From: Octopus sinensis
Lineage: Eukaryota
Assembly: GCF_006345805.1 (NCBI RefSeq)
Contig: NC_043023.1
Span: forward strand, 13,516,001-13,580,000
Length of the DNA: 64,000 bases
Direction of reading: 5' to 3'
Below, piece by piece: positions 7,620 through 53,824 of this stretch (positions within the stretch are counted from its first letter, which is position 1; every line of letters starts with the position of its first letter). The position numbers and the translations under genes were made by a program. The notes under the pieces are model-generated. The model made no database searches, was not told the DNA's origin, and worked only from the letters and a program-made list of their open reading frames with translations.

Positions 7620-8890
7620 CCTATTTCTTTACTACTCACAAGGGGCTAAACACAGAGAGGACAAACAAGGACAGACTCACGGATTAAGTCGATTATATCG
7701 ACCCCAGTGCGTAACTGGTACTTATTTAATCGACTCCCAAAGGATGAAAGGCAAAGTCGACCTCGGCGGAATTTGAACTCAGAACATAGAAGTAGAAGAA
7801 ATATCTATTTCTTTACTACCCACAAGGGGCTAAACACAGAGGGGGCGAACAAGGACAGACATAGGTATTAAGTCGATTACATCGACCTCAGTGCGTAACT
7901 GGTACTTATTTAATTGACCCCCAAAGGATGAAAGGCAAAGTCGACCTCGGCGGAATTTGAACTCAGAACATAGAAGTAGAAGAAATATATATTTCTTTAC
8001 TACCCACAAGGGGCTAAACACAGAGGGGACAAACAAGGACAGACTCACGGATTAAGTCGATTATATCGACCCCAGTGCGTAACTGGTACTTATTTAATCG
8101 ACTCCCAAAGGATGAAAGGCAAAGTCGACCTCGGCGGAATTTGAACTCAGAACATAGAAGTAGAAGAAATATCTATTTCTTTACTACCCACAAGGGGCTA
8201 AGCACAGAGGGGACGAACAAGGACAGACATAGGTATTAAGTCGATTACATCGACCCCAGTGCGTAACTGGTACTTATTTAATCGACCCGAAAGGATGAAA
8301 GGCAAAGTCGACCTCGGCGGAATTTGAACTCAGAACATAGAAGTAGAAGAAATATATATTTCTTACTACCACAAGGGGCTAAACAACAGAGGGGACAAAC
8401 AAGGACAGACTCACGGATTAAGTCGATTATATCGACCCCAGTGCGTAACTGGTACTTATTTAATCGACTCCCAAAGGATGATGAAGGCAAAGTCGACCTC
8501 GGCGGAATTTGAACTCAGAACATAGAAGTAGAAGAAATATCTATTTCTTTACTACCCACAAGGGGCTAAGCACAGAGGGGACGAACAAGGACAGACATAG
8601 GTATTAAGTCGATTACATCGACCCCAGTGCGTAACTGGTACTTATTTAATCGACCCCGAAAGGATGAAAGGCAAAGTCGACCTCGGCGGAATTTGAACTC
8701 AGAACATAGAAGTAGAAGAAATATCTATTTCTTTACTACCCACAAGGGGCTAAACACAGAGGGAACGAACAGGGACAGACTCACGGATTAAGTCGATTAC
8801 ATTGACCCCAGTGCGTAACTGGTACTTATTTAATCGACCCCCAAAGGATGAAAGGCAAAGTCAACCTCGGCGGAATTTGAACTCAGAACG
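7620..8890 (-). repeat. Tandem array of 7 units of about 182 bp from SINE family B, alternating A/B variants
   Basis: Units alternate CTCACGGATTAAG and CATAGGTATTAAG. Confidence 0.88.
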
Positions 8891-28194: not shown

Positions 28195-28493
28195 GACCAG
28201 CCTCATTGTGTTCCCGAAGGTCAAAAATGCCCTCTTTTACACCGACAAGAATCATTCGATCAAGCTCGACAGCCGACATTTATCAATTCGCTACCTCGGG
28301 CCTCAGAGCACAAAAATTGGCGGAGGCGGCGGAGGAGGAGGTGCCGGTAGTGGCGGCGGCGGCGGTAATAATAGTGTTTCTGGTGGCAACAAACCTGCCA
28401 CCGCTCCCGGCAGCAATCAGCCTAAGATTAAGCCCCGGAGTGAACCACCGCCCAAAGCTAATCCTCAGCCTGACCCGAAGCCTAAAGAGTCAG
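28195..28493 (+). CDS. Coding exon: C-terminal half of RRM1 (TSLIVFPKVKNALFYTDKNHSIKLDSRHLSIRYLG) plus Gly- and Pro/Lys-rich linker
   Basis: Polypyrimidine tract with tttcag| acceptor and cag|gtaagc donor; starts phase 2, ends phase 1, matching the next exon (G+AG = Glu). Confidence 0.88.
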
Positions 28494-28639: not shown

Positions 28640-28982
28640 CATAGCCATCATCATCACCATCACCACCATCATTGTCATCACTATCATCATCATCACCATT
28701 GTCATCATGGTTATTACCATCAATATCATCATCATCATCATCGTCATCACTATCATCATCATCATCACCATCATAATCATCATCACCATAATCATCATCA
28801 TCATCATTGTCATCATCACCACCATAGTCATCATCACCGTAATCATCACCACCACCATCATCATTATCGTCATCATCACCATCATAATCATCATCACCAT
28901 CATCATCGTCATCACCACCATCATCGTCATCATCACTATCATCATCATTGTAGTGTTTATAATTGTCGTTGTCATCATCCAT
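28640..28982. repeat. (CAT/CAC)n trinucleotide microsatellite in intron
   Basis: Direct reading. Confidence 0.95.
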
Positions 28983-32290: not shown

Positions 32291-32904
32291 TATGCTGAAA
32301 AGTTCCTGGTTTTGGGTAAAACAAAATAGAGGAGGATCAGTTAATTATGATTTTATTCAACATGTTCCCCTCTCAGATTCACACACTTATTGCAGCGGTC
32401 CTTGAGTTTTTCTAAGCCCTGTAAAAAAAACTTGGAAGCTTGGGCCTCCAACCAGGTTTTTCCCTACACCCTTAAAGCCAAGAACTTTTCACCACCCCTT
32501 CGTACATGCTTGTGTGTATATATATTTTATGTTTGTGTGTGTGTATTATATATATATATATATATATATCCTTGAAGCTGGTCTTCTTCTGGGCAACCAT
32601 TTAGCTCTGATCCTGAAGTCGCTAACTATTAATCTATGTTGAGGAGTACATCTTTCGCCTGGAAAGGTTTTGGCATTTATAAGCAGCTCTCTTTCCCTCT
32701 TTCTGGCGAGGATGTAGTCAATCTGGCTAGTGTGTCTGCCAGAACGGTAGGTGAGAGGTGTGTTTCCTGAAGTTGGTATTGCAAACCATAAGGCCAGATA
32801 AGACGGAGCCTGGTGCAGCCTTCAGGCTTCCCAGATCCCCGGTCAAACCGTCCAACCCATGCTAGCGCGGAAAACGGATGTTAAACGATGATGATGATTA
32901 CCAT

Positions 32905-33345
32905 GTGCGTCACAAAATAGGACCACAGAAAGAGAGGTGCTAAAGTCAGGCAGAGAGCAGCTCTGGAAAATCCTCGCTGAGCGATTTACGCACTATCTAG
33001 ACGAGGGAAGAATTCCCTCGCAGTGGAAAGAGTCAAATACCATCCTGCTGTATAAGAAGGGGCGCAGAGAAGATCTAAAGAACTACCGACCCATATGCCT
33101 GCTGTCTCACGTGTACAAGCTGTTCACGAAGTAATTATGAACAGGTTGTCACGTCGTCTCGACGAACAACAACCGAGGGAGCAAGCAGGCTTCCGGAAGA
33201 ACTACAGCACAATGGACCATATATTTGCTCTAACGCAACTGCTTGAGCGAGCAAATGAGTACAAGCTGCCTCTTTGCGTTGCGTTTATAGATTATGAGAA
33301 GGCCTTCGATAGCGTCGAAACCAATGCAGTGCTGAACTCGCTGCA
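32905..33345 (+). pseudogene. RTE-clade LINE reverse-transcriptase fragment
   Basis: WKESNTILLYKKG...NYRPICLLSHVYKLF, then after a frameshift EQAGFRKNYSTMDHIF...FIDYEKAFDSV. Confidence 0.88.
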
Positions 33346-33848
33346 GTTTGTTATATGGGAGTGAAAAATTCATTACAAATATAAGAGTAAATAATTATTA
33401 ATTTAATAATTGATAATAATTGATTGTCGGTGGCACGTAAAAAGCACCATCCGAATCGTAGCCGAAGCGAGTGCCGCCTCGACTGGCTTCCATAAAATGC
33501 ACCAATCCGACCGTGGCCGATGCCAGCCTCGCCTGGCACCAGTGCAGGTGGCACGTAAAAGGCACCCACTACACTCACGGAGTGGTTGGCGTTAGGAAGG
33601 GCATCCAGCTGTAGAAACACTGCCAGGTAAGACCGGAGCCTGGTGCAGCCTTCTGGCTTCCCAGATCCCAGTCGAACCATCCAACCCATGCTAGCATGGA
33701 AAACGGACGTTAAACGATGATGATGATGATGATAAATTTTACCAAGTAGTTTCGGTATGGAAAGAGAACCATTATCGGTAGGAATTTTTGTGTTATGTGT
33801 TAGTATGTATAAATGGTTATGTCTTCATCACTGGTTTTTCTTCTTCAG

Positions 33849-33972
33849 AGGATGACAAAATTGTGGTGATTCAAAATCTACCGAAAGGAATCGGTAAAAT
33901 TGGCGTGTTGCAGATTATCCCCACAGCAAAGAAGGTCAATTTTAAGGGGCCACCAAAGAAATCCAAGTTTGA
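33849..33972 (+). CDS. Coding exon: N-terminal half of RRM2 (EDDKIVVIQNLPKGIGKIGVLQIIPTAKKVNFKGPPKKSKF)
   Basis: ttcttcag| acceptor, ga|gtaagt donor; RNP2-like IVVIQNLP; phase 1 to 2 fits both neighbours. Confidence 0.9.
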
Positions 33973-38971: not shown

Positions 38972-39087
38972 GTCTGCCTTGTTGGAGTTCAACACTATAG
39001 CTCAGGCGAATGCTGTTATCAAGAAGAACGGTCAGTTGAGAGTTGGTGACCACACACTCTTCATTGAATCCATGACTAATCACAAAA
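38972..39087 (+). CDS. Coding exon: C-terminal half of RRM2 (SALLEFNTIAQANAVIKKNGQLRVGDHTLFIESMTNHK)
   Basis: ccttgcag| acceptor, a|gtaagt donor; phase 2 to 1; beta3-alpha2-beta4 pattern of an RRM. Confidence 0.9.
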
Positions 39088-39990
39088 GTAAGTCGCACCC
39101 TTTGTTCATATTATATTCTATCGTGGCACATAAAATCACCCACTACACTCTCGGAGTGGTTGGCGTTAGGAAGGCCATCCAGCCGTAGAAACACTGCCAG
39201 ATCAGACTGGAGCCTGGTGCAGCCTTCGGGCACCCCAGACCCCAGTTGAACCGTCCAACCCATGCTAGCATGGAAAGCGGACGTTAAACGATGATGATGT
39301 GTCCCTGACAAACCCATCGCAGACCCAGAAATAGGGACCCTGCAAACTTGTTACACACACACACACACATCCACACGCACATAGAAACCGTTGGGCACCT
39401 TCTCATAATTTTTGATAACTTGGCTAAGAATTTTTAGCCAAAGTATCAACACACTGGTTTTTTTTAACGTTTAAAAAAAAATATTTTTTTAGCCTGTTTG
39501 TTTCTTTGGCCAAACTGCGAAGTTACGAGGACATAAACATACCAACACCAGTTGTCGAGCAGTGGTGGGACGTGAGTATGCACACACACACACACATGCG
39601 ATGGGCTTCTTTTAGTTTCCGTCTACCAAATCCATTCACAAGGCTTTGGTCAGCTCGTGGTTATAGTAGAAGACACTTGCCCAAGGTGCCACGCAGTGGG
39701 ACTGAACCTGAAACCATGTGGTTGGGAAGCACATCTTCACATATATGTGTGTTTGTGCGTATATATGACGGGCTTTTTTCAGTTTCCATCTACTAAATCC
39801 ACTTACAAGACTTTGGTTGGCCCCCAAACTATAGTAGAAGGCACTTGCCCAAGATGCCTCACAGTGGGACTGAACCTGGAACCATGTGGTTGGGAAACAA
39901 GCTACTTACCACACAGCGATGCCTGTGCCTATTACCCATGCATGCATGTATATATATAAATATCTGTGTATGTGTGTGTGTGTGTGTTTT

Positions 39991-41775: not shown

Positions 41776-44700
41776 TGGAAGGTGTTTGTAAGCCATTTAA
41801 GAAACACACAAAAGCCGTTCGATTCACTTCAACATTTAAATTTAATTTGTCAAAATATTTTCGTCGCTTTGAGACCGCGACCTGTTCACTGACAAAAATA
41901 TATTGGAAGGTGTTTATAAGCCATTTAAGAAACACACAAAAACCGTTAGATTCACTTCAACGTTTAAATTTAATTTGTCAAAATATTTTCGTCGCTTTGA
42001 GACCGCGACCTGTTCACTGAGAAAAATATATTGGAAGGTGTTTATAAGCCATTTAAGAAACACACAAAAACCGTTAGATTCACTTCAACATTTAAATTTA
42101 GTTTGTCAAAATATTTTCATCGCTTTGAGACCGCGACCTGTTCACTGAGAAAAATATATTGGAAGGTGTTTATAAGCCATTTAAGAAACACACAAAAACC
42201 GTTAGATTCACTTCAACATTTAAATTTAATTTGTCAAAATATTTTCATTGCTTTGAGACCGCGACCTGTTCACTGAGAAAAATATATTGGAAGGTGTTTA
42301 TAAGCCATTTAAGAAACACACAAAAACCGTTAGATTCACTTCAACATTTAAATTTAATTTGTCAAAATATTTTCATCGCTTTGAGACCGCAACCTGTTCA
42401 CTGACAAAAATATATTGGAAGGTGTTATAAGCCATTTAAGAACACACAAAAACCGTTAGATTCACTTCAACATTTAAATTTAATTTGTCAAAATATTTTC
42501 GTCGCTTTGAGACCGCGACCTGTTCACTGAGAAAAATATATTGGAAGGTGTTTATAAGCCATTTAAGAAACACAACAAAAACCGTTAGATTCACTTCAAC
42601 ATTTAAATTTAATTTGTCAAAATATTTTCGTCGCTTTGAGACCGTGACCTGTTCACTGAGAAAAATATATTGGAAGGTGTTTATAAGCCATTAAGAAACA
42701 CACAAAAACCGTTAGATTCACTTAACATTTAAATTTAATTTGTCAAAATATTTTCGTCGCTTTGAGACCGCGACCTGTTCACTGAGAAAAATATATTGGA
42801 AGGTGTTATAAGCCATTTAAGAAACACACAAAAACCGTTAGATTCACTTCAACATTTAATTTAATTTGTCAAAATATTTTCGTCGCTTTGAGACCGCGAC
42901 CTGTTCACTGAGAAAAATATATTGGAAGGTGTTTATAAGCCATTTAAGAAACACACAAAAACCGTTAGATTCACTTCAACATTTAAATTTAATTTGTCAA
43001 AATATTTTCGTCGCTTTGAGACCGCGACCTGTTCACTGAGAAAAATATATTGGAAGGTGTTTATAAGCCATTAAGAAACACAAAAACCGTTAGATTCACT
43101 TCAACATTTAAATTTAATTTGTCAAAATATTTTCGTCGCTTTGAGACCGCGACCTGTTCACTGAGAAAAATATATTGGAAGGGTTTATAAGCCATTTAAG
43201 AAACCCACAAAAACCGTTAGATTCACTTCAACATTTAAATTTAATTTGTCAAAATATTTTCGTCGCTTTGAGACCGCGACCTGTTCACTGAGAAAAAATA
43301 TTGGAAGGTGTTTATAAGCCATTTAAGAAACACAAAAACCGTTAGATTCACTTCAACATTTAAATTTAATTTGTCAAAATATTTTCGTCGCTTTGAGACC
43401 GCGACCTGTTCACTGACAAAAATATATTGGAAGGTGTTTATAAGCCATTTAAGAAACACACAAAAACCGTTAGATTCACTTCAACATTTAAATTTAATTT
43501 GTCAAAATATTTTCGTCGCTTTGAGACCGCGACCTGTTCACTGAGAAAAATATATTGGAAGGTGTTATAAGCCATTTAAGAAACACAAAAACGTTAGATT
43601 CACTTCAACATTTAAATTTAATTTGTCAAAATATTTTCGTCGCTTTGAGACCGCGACCTGTTCACTGAGAAAAATATATTGGAAGGTGTTATAAGCCATT
43701 TAAGAAACACACAAAAACCGTTAGATTCACTTCAACATTTAAATTTAATTTGTCAAAATATTTTCGTCGCTTTGAGACCGCGACCTGTTCACTGAGAAAA
43801 ATATATTGGAAGGTGTTTATAAGCCATTTAAGAAACACAAAAACCGTTAGATTCACTTCAACATTTAAATTTAATTTGTCAAAATATTTTCGTCGCTTTG
43901 AGACCGCGACCTGTTCACTGAGAAAAATATATTGGAAGGTGTTTATAAGCCATTTAAGAAACACACAAAAACCGTTAGATTCACTTCAACATTTAAATTT
44001 AATTTGTCAAAATATTTTCGTCGCTTTGAGACCGCGACCTGTTCACTGAGAAAAATATATTGGAAGGTGTTTATAAGCCATTTAAGAAACACACAAAAAC
44101 CGTTAGATTCACTTCAACATTTAAATTTAATTTGTCAAAATATTTTCGTCGCTTTGAGACCGCGACCTGTTCACTGAGAAAAATATATTGGAAGGTGTTT
44201 ATAAGCCATTTAAGAAACACAAAAACCGTTAGATTCACTTCAACATTTAAATTTAATTTGTCAAAATATTTTCGTCGCTTTGAGACCGCGACCTGTTCAC
44301 TGAGAAAAATATATTGGAAGGTGTTATAAGCCATTTAAGAAACACAAAAACCGTTAGATTCACTTCAACATTTAAATTTAATTTGTCAAAATATTTTCGT
44401 CGCTTTGAGACCGCGACCTGTTCACTGAGAAAAATATATGGAAGGTGTTTATAAGCCATTTAAGAAACACACAAAAACCGTTAGATTCACTTCAACATTT
44501 AAATTTAATTTGTCAAAATATTTTCGTCGCTTTGAGACCGCGACCTGTTCACTGAGAAAAAATATTGGAAGGTGTTTATAAGCCATTTAAGAAACACACA
44601 AAAACGTTAGATTCACTTCAACATTTAAATTTAATTTGTCAAAATATTTTCGTCGCTTTGAGACCGCGACCTGTTCACTGAGAAAAATATATTGGAAGGT

Positions 44701-44936
44701 GTTTATAAGCCATTTAAGAAACACAAAAACCGTTAGATTCACTTCACATTTAAATTTAATTTGTCAAAATATTTTCGTCGCTTTGAGACCGCGACCTGTT
44801 CACTGAGAAAAATATATTGGAAGGTGTTTATAAGCCATTTAAGAAACACACAAAAACCGTTAGATTCACTTCAACATTTAAATTTAATTTGTCAAAATAT
44901 TTTCGTCGCTTTGAGACCGCGACCTGTTCACTGACA
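41776..44936. repeat. 128-bp satellite, about 25 copies, inside a fold-back element
   Basis: Unit TGGAAGGTGTTTATAAGCC...GTTCACTGAGAAAAATATAT; ORF starts spaced 128 apart; the inverted arm follows at 44971-45082. Confidence 0.96.
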
Positions 44937-45304
44937 AAATTCCATACTGCATCACTGCAGTATGGAATTTCAAAAGCGACGAAAATATTTTGACAAATTA
45001 AATTTAAATGTTGAAGTGAATCGAACGGCTTTTGTGTGTTTCTTAAATGGCTTACAAACACCTTCCACGCTGTAATTGTTTTTGATTATAGAACCCAGCT
45101 TAGTATCATTAGCTCTGTGGGCAGTGATGATGGGGAGATGCAGGAACGAAGGAGGGAGGTGTATAAAAATTGTTGTTAGCTCTGTGTGCAGTGATGATAA
45201 GATGTGTGAAGGAGGGAGGCATCTTCCAATTTAGGTTTCCATAGCAACTAATGCTCTCTCTCTCCCCTCCTACTCCACACTCTCTTTCTGATTTTCATTG
45301 GCAG

Positions 45305-45519
45305 GGCGGCCGAAGAACCAACTCGAAGGACCTTTCCATGAACAGACTCCCCCAAAGTCATCCAACGAGGCCAAAGACAGAGGTGGTGGCGGTGGCAATG
45401 ACAAATCCAACCAACAGAAAATGGCGCAGGGAGCCATGGGTTCCGGCCCCAACGAGGACAAGCGCTTTGTGTTTATGAGTAAGCGCGGAGGTGACCAACA
45501 GCAATCTCTTGGTCCAGAG
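45305..45519 (+). CDS. Coding exon: disordered linker (RPKNQLEGPFHEQ...GGDQQQSLGPE)
   Basis: Pyrimidine tract with ggcag| acceptor; gag|gttggt donor; phase 1 to 0; GC-rich unique island. Confidence 0.82.
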
Positions 45520-48189: not shown

Positions 48190-49245
48190 CTGCAAGCTGC
48201 CTGGTGACCTCACTGGTGTTGGTGCCACATAAAAAGCTCCCAGTAGACTCTGTAAAGGGGTTAGCATTAGGAAGGGCATCCAGCCATAGAAACCATACAA
48301 AAGCAGACCTCATTGGTGCTGGTACCGCATTAAAAGCACCCAGTACACTCTGTAAAGTGGTTGGCATTAGGAAGGGCATCCAGTACACTCTGTAAAGTGG
48401 TGGGCATTAGGAAGGGCATCCAGCCATAGAAACCATACCAAAGCAGACCTCACTGGTGCTGGTGCCACATAAAAAGCACCCAGTACACTCTGTGGAGTGG
48501 TTGGCATTAGGAAGGGCATCCAGTACACTCTGTAAAGTGGTGGGCATTAGGAAGGGCATCCAGCCATAGAAACCATGCCAAAGCAGACCTCACTGGTGCT
48601 GGTGCCACATAAAAAGCACCCAGTACACTCTGTGGAGTGGTTGGCATTAGGAAGGGCATCCAGTACACTCTGTAAAGTGGTGGGCATTAGGAAGGGCATC
48701 CAGCCATAGAAACCATGCCAAAGCAGACCTCACTGGTGCTGGTGCCACATAAAAAGCATCCAGTACACTCTGTGGAGTGGTTGGCATTAGGAAGGGCATC
48801 CAGTACACTCTGTAAAGTGGTGGGCATTAGGAAGGGCATCCAGCCATAGAAACCATGCCAAAGCAGACCTCACTGGTGCTGGTGCCACATAAAAAGCACC
48901 CAGTACACTCTGTGGAGTGGTTGGCATTAGGAAGGGCATCCAGTCATAGAAAACATACCAAAGCAGACCTCACAGGTGCTGGTGCCACATAAAAAGCACC
49001 CAGTACACTCTGTAGAGTGGTTGGCATTAGGAAGGGCATCCAGCCATAGAAACCATACCAAAGCAGACCTCACTGGTGCTGGTTCCACATAAAAAGCACC
49101 CAGTACACTCTGTGGAGTGGTTGGCATTAGGAAGGGCATCCAGCCATAAAAACCATGCCAAGTAGCCATCAGAGCTTGCAATAGTCTTCTGTCAAACTGT
49201 CCAACCCATGCCAGCATGGAAAATAGACATTAAATGATGATGATG
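48190..49245 (+). repeat. Tandem array of family C modules (alternating about 40- and 80-bp pieces) ending in the family C tail
   Basis: CAGTACACTCTGT..AGTGG.TGGCATTAGGAAGGGCATC repeated more than 12 times. Confidence 0.88.
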
Positions 49246-49441
49246 TAAATGTTTAATTGACCTTTCTTTCTCTCCCTTTTCTCCTCTTCCCTCTCTCTTT
49301 CCTCTTCTTTTTCTCCGCTTCCCTCTCTCCTCCTTCCTCTTCCTTTTCTCTTCCTTTCCCCTTACCCATCTATCTCCTTCTCCGCCGTATTATGCATAAA
49401 CATTACTTAATCCCTTTTTTTTTTCTCTCTCTTTCATTTAG

Positions 49442-52400
49442 GACCAACCCTGCTGCTCTCCAGTACGGCTTGGCTGCTCTGGAGAACTTGTTATCGCGGG
49501 CCGCAAAAATGGGGATGAATGAGCTGAAGAGCCTATTAACGGCGAACCCCCGACTGCACCAACTCTTTGCAGAGAACCAGGACTTTCAGCCCCGCCTGCA
49601 GAAGTTGTTTGCCCATAACCAGGACTTCCAACCCCAGCTGAAACGGTTGTTTGCTGCAAATCAGGTTTTCCTTCCCAAACTGCAAATGCTTATTGCAGCC
49701 TCCAGCCAGCAGCAACAGAGCAAAGAGAACCTCAACTTCAACATGGGGTCCCTCGGTCCCTTCGGACCTCACGGGCCCCTCCGACCGCAAGGTCACCCGA
49801 TGGGGCCACCCCAGGGCTCCATGAGGCCACCGTCGGGATCTGTCAGGCCGTCGCAAGGATCTGGCCGGATGATGCAGGGCCCGGGCGGGCCGCCGATGAG
49901 CATGCAGGAGCAGCAAGCGTTTAAGAAAGAGATGATGGTGAGACAACAGCGCCGGATGTACAGTGCGGCACGTGGCGCCGCCGACGACGAGGAGGAGGAG
50001 GAGGAGGAGGAGGATGATAACAACGAAAGGGGTTACCGCGAGGAGCAAGGATTCGGCAACGCTCGGAACTTCCCCGGCAGGGACGGCGGCTCTGGGCCCT
50101 GGCCGAAACAGGACGAGGGTCGGTCCCAGCCGCACCCTAGAATGTTTGACGAGGAGCCAGGCTTTCCCTTCCGTCGCCGTATGAACTTTGAGGGCGACGA
50201 CGATGATAGAAGACCCCCGTCTCAGCACCACCATCACCGCCGCCAACAGCAGCAGCAACAACAACAACAGCAGCATCATCATCATCATCAACAACATCAA
50301 CAAAAACAGCCAATGTTTACAGAAGAGATGGAGGAATTTGCTGAAAAGCAGCGTGTGCTGTACGACCAGGAGAGCGAAAACCGTGACCGGCCGCCGGCCT
50401 CCCCCTCCTCCAAGCGCCGTATGTTCGGGGCGAACGAGGACTCGATGTATAGCGAGGACCAGGCGCTGCTACACTCGGGGAGACAGCAAGGGTTTTACAA
50501 GGGCAGAGGTGGGGGCGACGATGACGACTTTGCTCCCCCCCACAAGCGACGGGCGATATACGTCGACGAACCCGAGAGGGGAGGACCGAATCGCCATCAG
50601 AGGCCCTTCGGAGGCGGCGGAGGAGGAGGAGGTGGAGGTGGTGGAGGAGATAACCTGCAAGATTTTAATGAGGGCCCTAGAATGTATGGGGCTTTTGGCG
50701 GCAGCGGTGGTGGTGGTGGGAGAGACAATTTTGGTGGTGGTGGTGGTGGTGGCGGCGGAAGAGATAACTTTGGCGGTGGTGGTGGTGGTGGTGGCGGAAG
50801 AGACAACTTTGGCGGTGGTGGTGGTGTCGATCCCAGCAACCAGGAAGGAGGAGGCTTTGATGGATCTCGGAACAGGGAGTATCCAGGCTCCAGACCTTAC
50901 GACGAATTTAGACATCGCGGAGGTGGCGGCAATGGTGGTGGTGGTGGTGGCCGTCTTGGCGTGGAAGACGACCGTATGGGAGGAGACGCTGGCGGACGGA
51001 AATCCCGGGAGATGTTCGACGAAAACATGGACTTTCCTAACCGAAATCCGAAGATGTTTGGACACAACGAGCCTTTCCATAGTCACGGGGGTAGCGACAG
51101 CTTTTCGGGGTCAATGATGCCCCCTCAACAATCCAATTTGGACACGAGCGCTCCCGGCCCCAGCATTGGTGAAACGAAACTCAACTACGTCTCCTTTGAT
51201 TATAACCACCAGCACTCTAATGTTCCCCTAACGGACATGGAGCCGTTCAGTAACAACCCCGGAAATTTCTCAGCCGGTGGCGCTGGCAGTGTTTCGCCCT
51301 CGTCCATGATGGGACAGGACAGCGGCAACAACGCCCCCTACGATAGGCACGGCCCCTCCATGTCGAGAAGTGCTGGAGGCGACGATGGTAACCAGTTTGG
51401 CCAGAGGGGTATGGAACCGTCTGGTCCTGGTTTTGACAACGAAATGGATCAGTCGTACTCCTCGCGGGACGACCAGTTTGGCCAGAGGCCCCCTCAGTTT
51501 GGTGTCGGTTCGAGAAACCTGAAGTCAGCCCTGAAGAATAGCTCTGCTTATAGGTTTGAGGACAGTTCCATGTCGGCCGGGAACTCCGACCAGGGCAAGG
51601 ACGTTCATAGCGGTGACTTTGGCAGTAACAACAACAACAACCGGATGTCAGATCCGAGTGAAAATCCGGACTCTGGAAGGGGTTTCAGGGACCGGGACCA
51701 TGAAGAGAGAGACACGTTTATGGGCACTTGGAGGAGCCCCCTTGGTATGGGAAACTACCAGCAGGAGAGAGGAGACGACGTGGGCAGACCCGGAAGCGGG
51801 TTCGGTGATGATATGAGCGGCAACAGACAGATGGATGACACGGCCAGTGTGGAGCAGCAGCAGATGTCGGGCAGCGGTAGCTTCCATGGGAATATGGATC
51901 GTGGCGGGTTTCAGTACGGTGGGAATGCGAGGGGTCAGTCCGACGGCGGAGAGGATTTCCCGGATTGGGGCCGCCAGAGGGACGGCGAAAACGAGGGTTT
52001 TGGAGTCGGGAGGGATAGCAGCGGTGGTGCTGGTGACAGTGGTCGTAGGATGCAGATGGGCGAGTCCCACGACTACGGACACAAGAGCAGTGAGGGCTAT
52101 AACAGGTATTACGGTAGTGGTGGTGGTGGTGGTGGTGGCGGTGGCGGCGGTAGTGATAGCCTCGGTGATGACAGACCTTCCTACCCCAGCCGTGGCGCCA
52201 ACAAAAACAACGACGACGACATCGAAGATCCTGGTTACAACGTGAAGTGGGGCCAAGGGGTCGGTAGCCTGGATCGAGGTTCGTCGAGGGAACGTAGCTG
52301 GATGTCCCGGGGCGACCCTGCGGACTATCGCCGCGTCGAGGACGACAACAACAACGACGACGACGATAGGGGCAAAGGGGCCGGTTACGGTTTCCAGTCG

Positions 52401-53459
52401 GACAGCGAGAACAGAGGGAGCCACTTGTACGAGGACAACTGGCAGCAGAGCGGGGATTACCGCCACCACGATAGCAAGTCGGATTATCCGGGAGACGGAG
52501 CTGGTGGTCATAGAATCGAGTCGTCGTTCCGGCGCGGGGTCAGCTACGGCCGAGACGAGGACCTGGAAGAACCGGCGCGCGATGAGGAGGCCCCGTACTA
52601 TCGTTCCGGCAGGAGTGTTGCGTTTGAGAGGGACAACTATAGTTATAACGAGGAATATGACAATGGCGGTAACGAGAGTAATACTAATGTGGATGAAGGC
52701 GGTTATTATAGTGGGGGCGGGGCTGCTATGGAGCAGAATTTGTCCGACGATAGGGAGAGCTACAGAAGGCAGGAGAGATATGGGGAGCAGAAAATGGAAG
52801 AGGATTTTGAACAGGACGGCTCTGATCCTCCCCTTGGCTGGAGAAGCTCCTCATCGAAACAGGACGGCTCTGACCCTCCGCTTGGCTGGAGAAGCTCTTC
52901 ATCGAAACAGGACGGCTCTGACCCACCGCTTGGCTGGAGAAACCCCGGGTCGAAACAAGACGGCTCCGACCCTCCGCTCGGCTGGAGAAACCCCGCGTCG
53001 AAACAGGACGGTCCCGACCCCCCGCTCGGCTGGAGGAACCACAAGTATTTTTCCTCGTCGCCATCCAAGTCGGATCCCCCGTCCTCGTCGAGGAGGGGCC
53101 GGGACGACGCGGAAGGTGGCGGCAGCTGGGAGAGGAACCAACGCGGTTCTGGGTACCACGGCGACCGATCCGGCGGGGAACAAGGGCATCGAAGAGGGCG
53201 GTCGTCGCGCAGTAACCGGTCGTACGGCCGCAATTCCAACCGCGACAGAGCAGGATCGAGGTGCGGCGGCGGCGGTGGTGGTCGAGGTTCCTACGGCGAC
53301 GCGTCCGAAGGTGACGCGAATACCGGCGGCGGCAGCAAGGAGGACCAGTACGGGCAAGACACGATGCGGAAGGTCGTAATGTCGAGGGACTGGAAAGGCG
53401 ACGGAGGAGGCGGAGGGGAGATGATGCGTCGCCACCACAAGCAGTCGAGGTGGAACTAA
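49442..53459 (+). CDS. 4-kb terminal coding exon: about 1338-aa mostly low-complexity G/Q/D/R/S-rich region with internal repeats
   Basis: Long pyrimidine tract with ttag| acceptor at 49441; phase 2 start; stop-free to TAA 53457-53459; GC-rich against AT-rich flanks; repeat units differ mostly at synonymous positions. Confidence 0.93.
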
Positions 53460-53824
53460 GGTCCCGTGGGCTCTCACACGGTCGAGGGAACAGCTTACGG
53501 TCGAAAAACGAACAAGCAAGTGGAAGCTGCAATACGAGTCGAGGGACGGCCATCTCGGCAGTTTCTTCCAACACGGCAAAAGAAAAATATATATATATGT
53601 ATATATATCAAATGTGAGGATAAAATTCTTTTCGAAAAAAATATCTTCTCGAAAAAAATTTTATCAATGGCCAGCATATTAAAAAATACCTTTAACGTTT
53701 AAATTTATAAACAATTCATAAATGAGGGCAAAGGAAAAAAAAAATTTCAAATGCCAAATATGCCGAAAAATTGGACATATTGTCCATTAACCATATAATT
53801 TTTTCACAGTACGCACGCTACTCG

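What the first reader, a model, noticed from the sequence alone, without database searches (positions are those of the whole stretch)
52809..53039. Five tandem 16-aa QDGSDPPLGWR repeats, a candidate GW-type (Argonaute-hook-like) docking array
Seen: 48-bp units whose core differences are mostly synonymous (gat/gac, cct/cca/ccc, ctt/ctc, cag/caa, aga/agg), so the peptide is being conserved. Further Trp residues flanked by G/S/T lie nearby (GTWR, KWGQG, GSWE). Knowledge: GW/WG motifs in disordered regions bind Argonaute PIWI pockets (TNRC6/GW182, plant NRPE1). Inference: with RRMs in the same protein, this could link RNA to small-RNA machinery. A generic sticker or other short-motif role is equally possible.
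Basis: partly seen in the sequence, partly recalled or inferred. Interest (0 to 1): 0.7.

Follow-up and report, generated by a model that had tools for sequence, protein, structure and literature searches.

The report
Conserved tryptophan peptide repeated five times
A 16-residue peptide module with a strictly conserved 11-residue, tryptophan-containing core is repeated five times in the disordered tail of a large low-complexity animal protein; selection has kept it, so it is probably a multi-copy docking site, but nothing yet shows that it binds Argonaute.

Summary
Five in-frame 48-bp units lie at 52812-53051 (+), inside a 1,338-codon terminal exon (49442-53459). They encode QDG[S/P]DPPLGWR plus a variable 5-residue spacer.

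Among the five copies, the 11-codon core has at least 9 synonymous changes against 1 replacement (pN/pS 0.03, P about 1.6e-5). The spacer in the same units evolves almost freely (pN/pS 0.7-0.85). Synonymous divergence between copies is about 0.5 per site. The copies are therefore old, not homogenised, and kept at the peptide level.

AlphaFold2 (single sequence) predicts no secondary structure for this tail. No Pfam family, solved structure or homologue was found, including in an exhaustive phmmer search of 1.84 billion proteins. The searchable collections seem to lack this lineage, so conservation across species could not be tested.

The formal Ago-hook criteria are met: a GW dipeptide, a disordered setting, and Trp residues at least 10 residues apart. 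But known Ago hooks constrain little beyond the Trp, and here eleven consecutive residues are held. I therefore favour a sequence-specific, multivalent short-linear-motif array with an unknown reader. Ago/PIWI remains a minority possibility.

An RRM-like domain lies upstream, but it is degenerate and its splice link to this exon is unresolved by one nucleotide.

The parts
52812..52859 (+). Repeat unit 1: QDGSDPPLGWR core plus SSSSK spacer
   Evidence: unit profile 33.2 bits
52860..52907 (+). Repeat unit 2: QDGSDPPLGWR plus SSSSK
   Evidence: differs from unit 1 at 3 synonymous sites only
52908..52955 (+). Repeat unit 3: QDGSDPPLGWR plus NPGSK
52956..53003 (+). Repeat unit 4: QDGSDPPLGWR plus NPASK
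53004..53051 (+). Repeat unit 5: QDGPDPPLGWR (core 53004-53036, the only replacement, S to P) followed by NHKYF, where the repeat ends
53064..53096 (+). Possible decayed sixth unit, SK-SDPP-SSSRR. It keeps the SK and SDPP pieces but has lost QDG and LGW. Not significant on its own.
   Evidence: (unit profile -4.6 bits)
49442..53459 (+). Terminal coding exon that holds the array: 1,338 codons plus a TAA stop at 53457-53459. The acceptor follows a tract that is 95% pyrimidine. Composition: Gly 18%, Ser 10.5%, Arg 9.3%, Asp 9.1%, Trp 1.0%. No Pfam domain. The tail is predicted to be unstructured.
33849..33972 (+). Upstream exon encoding the first half of an RRM-like domain (DDKIVVIQNLPKG...KSKFE). 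Good AG and GTAAGT splice sites.
38972..39087 (+). Upstream exon encoding the second half of the RRM-like domain (SALLEFNTIAQANAVIKKNGQLRVGDHTLFIESMTNHK). It gives the best RRM-profile score of about 2,500 ORF pieces in the window. The donor AAA|GTAAGT leaves a 1-nt carry-over.
28195..28493 (+). Upstream exon in phase with 33849: a weak RRM-like C-terminal half (TSLIVFPKVKNALFYTDKNHSIKLDSRHLSIRYLG) followed by a Gly- and Pro-rich linker
   Evidence: (3.3 bits; 13 of 1000 shuffles reach it)
45305..45478 (+). Candidate exon in phase with the 39087 donor (RPKNQLEGPFHEQ...KRFVFM). It also ends with a 1-nt carry-over, so it does not by itself join the terminal exon, which needs 2 nt.

Best explanation
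The array is a translated, selectively maintained platform of five copies of one short linear motif, set in an intrinsically disordered C-terminal tail.

Each 16-residue module has two parts. The first is an 11-residue recognition core, Q-D-G-S/P-D-P-P-L-G-W-R: an acidic/polar lead-in, a Pro-Pro-Leu stretch likely to adopt a polyproline-II conformation, a Gly turn, a Trp anchor and an Arg. The second is a 5-residue Ser/Asn/Pro-rich spacer that is free to change.

I infer that each core docks, Trp first, into a hydrophobic pocket of a folded reader domain that also contacts the flanking residues. Five copies at a fixed 16-residue pitch would then give avidity, or recruit several reader molecules to one chain.

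What is shown: the repeat, its reading frame, purifying selection on the core but not the spacer, the old age of the copies, and the absence of predicted structure.
For: - Five in-frame units, found nowhere else in the window.
- Core: at least 9 synonymous to 1 replacement events, pN/pS 0.031, P = 1.6e-5. The spacer in the same units has pN/pS 0.69-0.85, which serves as an internal control.
- Only the frame of the long ORF gives this pattern.
- Synonymous difference between copies is about 0.5 per site, so the copies are old and not kept alike by recent duplication or conversion.
- The tail 52602-53456 has no DSSP-assigned secondary structure, mean pLDDT 45.9 and pTM 0.13. Its composition is typical of disordered regions.
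- Trp is rare in this exon (14 of 1,338 residues), and five of these are the repeat Trp.
- Constraint over 11 consecutive residues is what a peptide-reader interface predicts. It is unlike the fast-evolving flanks of known GW hooks.
Against: - No partner, no expression data and no orthologue could be examined. All three word-indexed protein searches, the exhaustive 1.84-billion-protein search and two metagenome scans returned nothing related.
- The core matches no motif class I could test or recall: GYF ligand, UHM ligand, Homer EVH1, AP2 DPW, WW PPLP.
- The selection test rests on only 10 core events within one gene. Strong transition bias would raise P to roughly 5e-4 (my own estimate), which is still significant.
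- The AlphaFold run used a single sequence, so low confidence is weak evidence for disorder.
Confidence: 0.6

Rival explanations
1. Argonaute/PIWI hook. Each GW inserts its Trp into the Trp-binding pockets on the PIWI domain of an Ago- or Piwi-clade protein. The five copies recruit one or several small-RNA effector complexes to this protein, as the tandem repeats of plant NRPE1 or the GW182 Ago-binding domain do.
For: - GW in every unit, in a tail predicted to be unstructured.
- The 16-residue Trp spacing satisfies the published requirement of two Trp residues at least 10 residues apart.
- The architecture closely parallels the NRPE1 17-residue repeats that carry its Ago hooks.
- The short Trp-containing octarepeat region of the mammalian prion protein is also reported to bind Argonaute (PMC7583789).
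- Upstream exons on the same strand encode an RRM-like domain.
Against: - Known hooks constrain Trp and overall composition, not a long flanking sequence: ABD Ka/Ks is 0.63-1.53 in a group of animals that includes molluscs, and NRPE1 repeats vary widely. Here 11 residues are fixed at pN/pS 0.03.
- Leu at -2, Pro-Pro at -4/-3 and Arg at +1 are not the small/polar flanks usual for hooks (my own knowledge of the Till 2007, El-Shami 2007 and Pfaff 2013 descriptions).
- Only 7 GW/WG dipeptides occur in 1,338 residues, and there is no enrichment outside the array.
- No homology to GW182 or any hook protein.
- The RRM-like domain lacks the RNA-stacking aromatic residues, and its link to this exon is unresolved.
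Confidence: 0.12
2. Generic sticker array. The Trp-Arg pairs act as aromatic/cation-pi stickers that tune self-association or condensate formation of this Gly/Ser/Arg/Asp-rich low-complexity protein. There is no dedicated folded reader.
For: - The exon is a typical low-complexity domain with Arg 9.3%, Gly 18%, Phe 4%, Tyr 3.2%, and 15 FG, 11 YG and 20 RG dipeptides.
- The same exon carries other short tandem peptide repeats.
Against: Sticker function needs the aromatic and Arg residues and their spacing, not an invariant Q-D-G-S-D-P-P-L-G lead-in. The spacer five residues away drifts freely while all 11 core positions are held.
Confidence: 0.15
3. Neutral in-frame minisatellite. A 48-bp tandem duplication, common in this repeat-rich genome, happened to fall in a tolerant disordered exon and has no function of its own.
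For: - The window is full of tandem arrays (34 TRF rows with score of at least 250).
- The same exon holds other in-frame repeats.
- A decayed unit may flank the array.
Against: Neutral decay would spread changes over all codon positions. Instead the core shows 9 synonymous to 1 replacement events at pS of about 0.5, while the adjoining spacer shows the neutral-like pattern.
Confidence: 0.05
4. Not a protein feature at all. The long ORF is not expressed (a pseudo-exon or a GC-rich chance ORF), and the pattern reflects something at the DNA or RNA level.
For: - No transcript or homologue evidence was obtainable.
- The antisense strand also has ORFs of 280-290 codons.
- The upstream splice chain does not close.
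Against: - An open frame of 1,400 codons ends in a region that returns to about 41% GC.
- A very strong acceptor sits at 49442.
- The substitution pattern is frame-specific and synonymous-biased only in that frame.
Confidence: 0.03

Closest known systems
NRPE1 (plant RNA polymerase V largest subunit) C-terminal 17-residue repeat subdomain, an Ago-hook platform
   Same: Tandem units of nearly the same length (17 versus 16 residues), lying in a disordered C-terminal region, with polar/charged/Ser-rich remainder. In A. thaliana NRPE1, ten complete and two degenerate 17-residue repeats carry twelve of the Ago-hook motifs.
   Different: No sequence relationship. The NRPE1 consensus DKKNSETESGPAAWGSW has Trp flanked by Ala/Gly/Ser. 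Here the flanks are Pro-Pro-Leu-Gly before Trp and Arg after it. NRPE1 repeats vary widely in number and sequence between plants, whereas here 11 residues are under strong purifying selection between copies. Ago binding is shown for NRPE1 and untested here.
GW182/TNRC6 Ago-binding domain and silencing-domain W-motifs (ligands of the Ago PIWI pockets and the CNOT9 pockets)
   Same: Trp in a disordered, Gly/Ser-rich context used as a multivalent anchor. Spacing of at least 10 residues between the Trp residues.
   Different: - No homology and none of the family's domain order.
- Far fewer GW/WG dipeptides (7 in 1,338 residues).
- GW182 W-rich domains evolve fast in invertebrates, with Ka/Ks up to 1.5.
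- The RRM-like domain here lies upstream of a tail of about 1,300 residues rather than near the C-terminus.
Octarepeat region of the mammalian cellular prion protein (reported Argonaute binder)
   Same: A handful of short tandem repeats, each with one Trp next to Gly, in a disordered region. Reported to bind Argonaute (Gibbings et al. 2012, as summarised in PMC7583789).
   Different: Shorter units, different sequence, and an extracellular/endomembrane protein with a metal-binding role. There is no evidence of any relationship.
GYF-domain ligands (PPG-Phi motifs of TNRC6, TTP, ZNF598, SmB, CD2)
   Same: A Pro-Pro ... Gly-aromatic peptide, often repeated, in RNA-regulatory proteins. The core PPLGWR looks superficially like PPG-Phi-R.
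   Different: Gly must follow Pro-Pro directly, because any larger side chain clashes with the domain. The GIGYF/Smy2 pocket is also too small for Trp (PMC10187677). Here a Leu sits between Pro-Pro and Gly, and the aromatic residue is Trp.

Membership tests
GW/WG Argonaute-hook platform | Trp adjacent to Gly within an intrinsically disordered region | tested here: met
   GW in all five units. The tail has no predicted secondary structure, mean pLDDT 45.9 (single sequence).
GW/WG Argonaute-hook platform | At least two Trp residues separated by ten or more residues, so that two PIWI pockets can be bridged | tested here: met
   Trp recurs every 16 residues. Criterion as stated in PMC9262622.
GW/WG Argonaute-hook platform | Flanks small/polar and weakly constrained; recognition rests on Trp and composition | tested here: not met
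   The 11-residue core has pN/pS 0.031, with Leu at -2, Pro-Pro at -4/-3 and Arg at +1. By contrast, Ka/Ks is 0.63-1.53 for GW182 Ago-binding domains in a group of animals that includes molluscs, and NRPE1 repeats vary widely.
GW/WG Argonaute-hook platform | Enrichment of GW/WG across the domain | tested here: inconclusive
   Seven GW/WG in 1,338 residues, five of them the repeat. Outside it, 2 of 9 Trp residues touch Gly, about the chance rate at 18% Gly.
GW/WG Argonaute-hook platform | Trp-dependent binding to the PIWI-domain pockets of an Ago or Piwi protein | not testable with these tools
   No complex prediction or binding assay was available.
GW182/TNRC6 protein family | Sequence homology and domain order (GW-rich N-terminus, UBA, Q-rich, PAM2, RRM, short C-terminus) | tested here: not met
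   No Pfam hit. No related protein among 1.84 billion representatives. The array lies about 1,120 residues into a terminal exon that lies downstream of the RRM-like exons.
GYF-domain ligand (PPG-Phi) | Gly immediately after Pro-Pro | tested here: not met
   The core reads P-P-L-G-W. The requirement comes from PMC10187677.
GYF-domain ligand (PPG-Phi) | The hydrophobic residue after Gly is not Trp (Smy2/GIGYF subclass) | tested here: not met
   The residue after Gly is Trp. The pocket is too small for an indole.
UHM-ligand motif (ULM) | A basic run before Trp and acidic residues after it | tested here: not met
   Here acidic and Pro residues precede Trp, and Arg follows it. The consensus is from my own knowledge and was not checked in a paper.
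   Pfam: no family at E up to 10. PDB sequence search: no RRM. BLASTP against PTBP1: E = 3.2.
   RNP2 reads IVVIQNL and RNP1 reads KFESALLEF. The three canonical aromatic positions are Val, Ser and Leu.
   The exons are on the same strand and are the nearest upstream coding-like exons. But the donors at 39087 and 45478 each leave a 1-nt carry-over, and the acceptor at 49442 needs 2 nt. No convincing bridging exon was found.

The most novel reading that the evidence does not exclude
The array is a lineage-specific Argonaute/Piwi hook on a large low-complexity protein that may also carry a degenerate RRM-like domain. That would make it an adaptor, independent of GW182, that tethers small-RNA effector complexes to a new RNA-associated scaffold in this animal lineage. 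Its unusually long conserved flank might give clade- or paralogue-specific Ago/Piwi selectivity.
Probability: 0.1. Interest if true: 0.7.

Novelty: new variant of a known kind. Interest (0 to 1): 0.35.

Why it matters
Tandem arrays of short linear motifs in disordered tails are a known way to build multivalent docking platforms. This core, QDGSDPPLGWR, matches no motif class I could test, and it carries an unusually clean within-gene signature of selection: the core is held while the spacer drifts.

If a reader is found, that would define a new Trp-anchored motif and its reader domain.

As it stands, this is a well-supported candidate functional motif in an uncharacterised protein, not a demonstrated system.

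Tried and rejected
**Homologue searches, all empty**
- Three word-indexed protein searches, each with a different query: the whole exon, the C-terminal 371 residues, and the RRM-like part plus the helical part. The first two saturated at 8,000 low-complexity candidates.
- An exhaustive phmmer search of 1.84 billion representatives gave only two hits, E = 1e-4 and 3.5e-4. Both are unrelated tandem repeats that align to the array by repeat periodicity. One has a 16-residue ...SLGWH... repeat; the other looks like a neuropeptide precursor.
- A metagenome scan by protein and another by a degenerate DNA pattern for DGSDPPLGWR.
- An exact-product look-up of the ATG-started ORF.
- I conclude that the collections do not hold this lineage, so absence of hits says nothing about conservation.

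**Domain and structure searches**
- Pfam on the exon and on the RRM-like region found nothing. A PDB sequence search gave nothing meaningful.
- AlphaFold2 on the RRM-like plus helical region had pLDDT 45, too poor for a fold search, so none was run.

**Literature.** A full-text search for 'PPLGW' found four irrelevant papers.

**Motif classes considered and rejected.** The GYF ligand was rejected against a published criterion. The following were rejected from my own knowledge of the consensus patterns, and none was tested experimentally:
- UHM ligand
- Homer EVH1 PPxxF
- AP2 DPW
- WW PPLP
- tankyrase RxxPDG
- SPOP degron (it would fit only the two SSSSK spacers, which are not conserved)
- LIR motif
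- the start of a WW domain
- a neuropeptide precursor (no signal peptide and the wrong context)

**Gene model.** I tried to close the splice chain into the terminal exon with relaxed splice-site scans. No convincing bridging exon turned up.

Full report
**The observation**

The region 52300-53600 reads as continuous coding sequence in the frame of a long ORF, 49257-53459. Tandem Repeats Finder reports one array at 52810-53040 with period 48, 4.8 copies, 89% matches and no indels.

In frame, the five units start at 52812, 52860, 52908, 52956 and 53004. They read QDGSDPPLGWRSSSSK (twice), QDGSDPPLGWRNPGSK, QDGSDPPLGWRNPASK and QDGPDPPLGWRNHKYF. A 21-nt probe from the core, allowing 3 mismatches, hits only these five sites in the 64-kb window, against zero expected from shuffles. 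A profile built from the five units finds no other significant copy in the exon. Directly after the array, 'SK-SDPP-SSSRR' (53064-53096) may be a decayed sixth unit that has lost QDG and LGW.

**Is the peptide conserved?**

Codon by codon, the 11 core codons differ between units at nine nucleotide sites. Eight of these are third positions. The minimum history is 9 synonymous changes and 1 replacement (Ser to Pro in unit 5). With 23% of core sites synonymous, this has binomial P = 1.6e-5. Allowing a strong transition bias raises P to roughly 5e-4 by my own estimate.

- Nei-Gojobori pN/pS, summed over all pairs of units, is 0.031 for the core.
- For the 5-codon spacer in the same units it is 0.85, or 0.69 without unit 5. 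This serves as an internal control.
- Of the six reading frames, the frame of the long ORF gives the best ratio, 9:1. The other two + frames give 0:9 and 1:9, and the codon-aligned antisense frame gives 7:3.
- The synonymous difference between units is about 0.5 per site. The copies are therefore old and have not been kept alike by recent duplication or gene conversion.

What has been preserved is the peptide.

**Context**

The window is a repeat-rich, eukaryote-type sequence. It has many satellites and microsatellites, a LINE-like reverse-transcriptase fragment and a mariner-like fragment.

The array lies about 1,120 residues into a terminal exon. That exon starts at a very strong acceptor at 49442, preceded by a tract that is 95% pyrimidine, and ends at TAA 53457-53459. 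The 1,338 residues are Gly 18%, Ser 10.5%, Arg 9.3%, Asp 9.1% and Gln 6.6%, with Trp at 1.0% (14 residues, five of them in the array) and a single Cys. Pfam finds nothing.

AlphaFold2 on the last 285 residues (single sequence) gives no secondary structure at all, mean pLDDT 45.9 and pTM 0.13. This fits disorder, with the caveat that no alignment was available.

The same exon holds other in-frame tandem peptide repeats:
- a 14-residue NQDFQPxLxxLFAx motif, three copies, at 49575-49700, with a partial copy before it at 49542-49574 and weakly predicted as helical;
- a polyGln/His tract at 50244-50310;
- a 13-residue GGGGGGGGRDNFG motif, three copies, at 50706-50826.

So this protein seems to grow by duplicating short modules.

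**The 'RRM in the same protein' claim**

Upstream on the same strand I found exons with good splice sites and mutually consistent phases: 28195-28493, 33849-33972 and 38972-39087. The last two together encode DDKIVVIQNLPKGIGKIGVLQIIPTAKKVNFKGPPKKSKFESALLEFNTIAQANAVIKKNGQLRVGDHTLFIESMTNHK, which reads like an RRM.

The evidence on whether it is one is mixed:
- Pfam does not report it at E up to 10. A PDB sequence search shows no RRM.
- The 38972 exon is the top-scoring piece among about 2,500 ORF pieces on both strands of the window.
- The three aromatic RNP positions are Val, Ser and Leu, so canonical RNA stacking is doubtful.

There is also a splicing problem. The donor at 39087 leaves one nucleotide of carry-over, and so does the donor of a further candidate exon, 45305-45478. 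The acceptor at 49442 needs two. Scans with relaxed splice-site criteria found no convincing bridging exon. A link between the RRM-like domain and the array is therefore plausible but not shown.

**Relatives**

Nothing related was found. The three word-indexed searches returned no significant hit, and two of them saturated on low-complexity words. The exhaustive phmmer search of 1.84 billion representatives with 1,199 residues of the exon gave two marginal hits. Both are unrelated tandem repeats aligned to the array only. Two metagenome scans and an exact-product look-up were empty.

Not even the non-repetitive parts of the query found a relative. I read this as the collections lacking this lineage, not as evidence that the gene is an orphan.

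**Mechanism**

A disordered tail, a rare Trp at a fixed 16-residue pitch, a core held over eleven consecutive residues and a freely drifting spacer together fit a multivalent short-linear-motif platform. Each core would be a docking peptide and each spacer a flexible linker. I commit to that explanation at about 0.6.

The Ago-hook version is a special case of it. In its favour:
- a GW in each unit, in a tail predicted to be disordered;
- Trp spacing above the published minimum of ten residues (PMC9262622);
- a striking architectural parallel in plant NRPE1, whose 17-residue DKKNSETESGPAAWGSW repeats carry the AGO4 hooks (10.1101/111831);
- the reported Ago binding of the prion-protein octarepeat region (PMC7583789).

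Against it:
- Their flanks evolve fast. Ka/Ks is 0.63-1.53 for the GW182 Ago-binding domain in a group of animals that includes molluscs (PMC4615383). NRPE1 repeats 'vary widely' under 'low selective pressure'.
- A reader that needs only the indole would not hold Q-D-G-S-D-P-P-L in place at pN/pS 0.03.
- Outside the array, Trp is not preferentially next to Gly.

I therefore put the Ago/Piwi reading at about 0.12. A generic Trp/Arg sticker role is at about 0.15 and is disfavoured by the same argument. A neutral minisatellite is at about 0.05 and is contradicted.

**Other motif classes**

The nearest look-alike, the GYF ligand PPG-Phi, fails on published structural grounds. Gly must follow Pro-Pro directly, and the GIGYF/Smy2 pocket cannot take Trp (PMC10187677). 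Here the sequence is P-P-L-G-W. The UHM ligand, Homer PPxxF, AP2 DPW, WW PPLP, tankyrase, SPOP and LIR patterns do not fit. These consensus patterns are from my own knowledge. 'PPLGW' does not occur in any relevant paper in the held library.

**Verdict**

The repeat is real and translated in frame, and its core has been kept by selection. It is best described as a new Trp-anchored motif array of a known general kind, with an unknown reader. The Argonaute idea is legitimate but weakly supported.

The most useful next data are orthologous sequences, transcript and peptide evidence, and a pull-down comparing wild-type with core-mutant peptides.

Noticed in passing
49542-49700 (+): A second in-frame tandem peptide repeat in the same exon: the 14-residue motif NQDFQPxLxxLFAx, three copies, preceded by a partial copy (ANPRLHQLFAE). 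AlphaFold2 predicts it as helices, at a modest pLDDT of 52-64.
   Followed up: partly
50706-50826 (+), 50244-50310 (+), 49989-50012 (+): Further in-frame low-complexity repeats in the exon: a 39-bp unit encoding GGGGGGGGRDNFG (3.1 copies), a polyGln/His tract and a polyGlu run. The protein seems to grow by duplicating short modules.
   Followed up: no
53064-53096 (+): Directly after unit 5, 'SK-SDPP-SSSRR' keeps the spacer end and the SDPP piece of the unit but lacks QDG and LGW. It may be a decayed sixth copy that lost its Trp. It is not significant on its own.
   Followed up: partly
39087 / 45478 / 49442 (+): The upstream exons chain in phase (28195-28493, 33849-33972, 38972-39087, candidate 45305-45478). 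But the last donor leaves 1 nt of carry-over and the terminal exon's acceptor needs 2 nt. Either a small exon was missed, a weak donor at 39091 is used, or there is a 1-nt problem in the sequence.
   Followed up: yes
33849-33972 + 38972-39087 (+): The RRM-like domain has none of the three canonical RNP aromatic residues (RNP2 IVVIQNL, RNP1 KFESALLEF). If it is an RRM fold, it is probably a protein-binding or otherwise atypical one.
   Followed up: partly
41776-44939 (+) and 48240-49161 (+): The intron before the terminal exon holds a 128-bp satellite of 25 copies (97% matches). It also holds overlapping 100-, 140- and 240-bp arrays that end about 280 bp before the acceptor.
   Followed up: no
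32898-33361 (+); about 27190-27330 (+); 23878-23973 (-): Transposon remnants in the introns: a LINE-like reverse-transcriptase fragment (YRPICLL...FIDYEKAFDSV), a mariner-like transposase N-terminal fragment, and another RT-like piece on the minus strand.
   Followed up: no
28646-28948 (+): A (CAT)n microsatellite of about 100 copies, just 3' of the 28493 donor, reads as a long polyHis run in one frame. It lies in the intron and is not coding in this model.
   Followed up: no
P0002, not in the window: One of the two marginal hits of the exhaustive search is a 265-residue protein with eight KQDADDE[AG]MRW[NA]RHGR units between basic sites. It looks like a neuropeptide-precursor-type repeat and resembles the array only in periodicity and in a Trp-Arg pair.
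   Followed up: no
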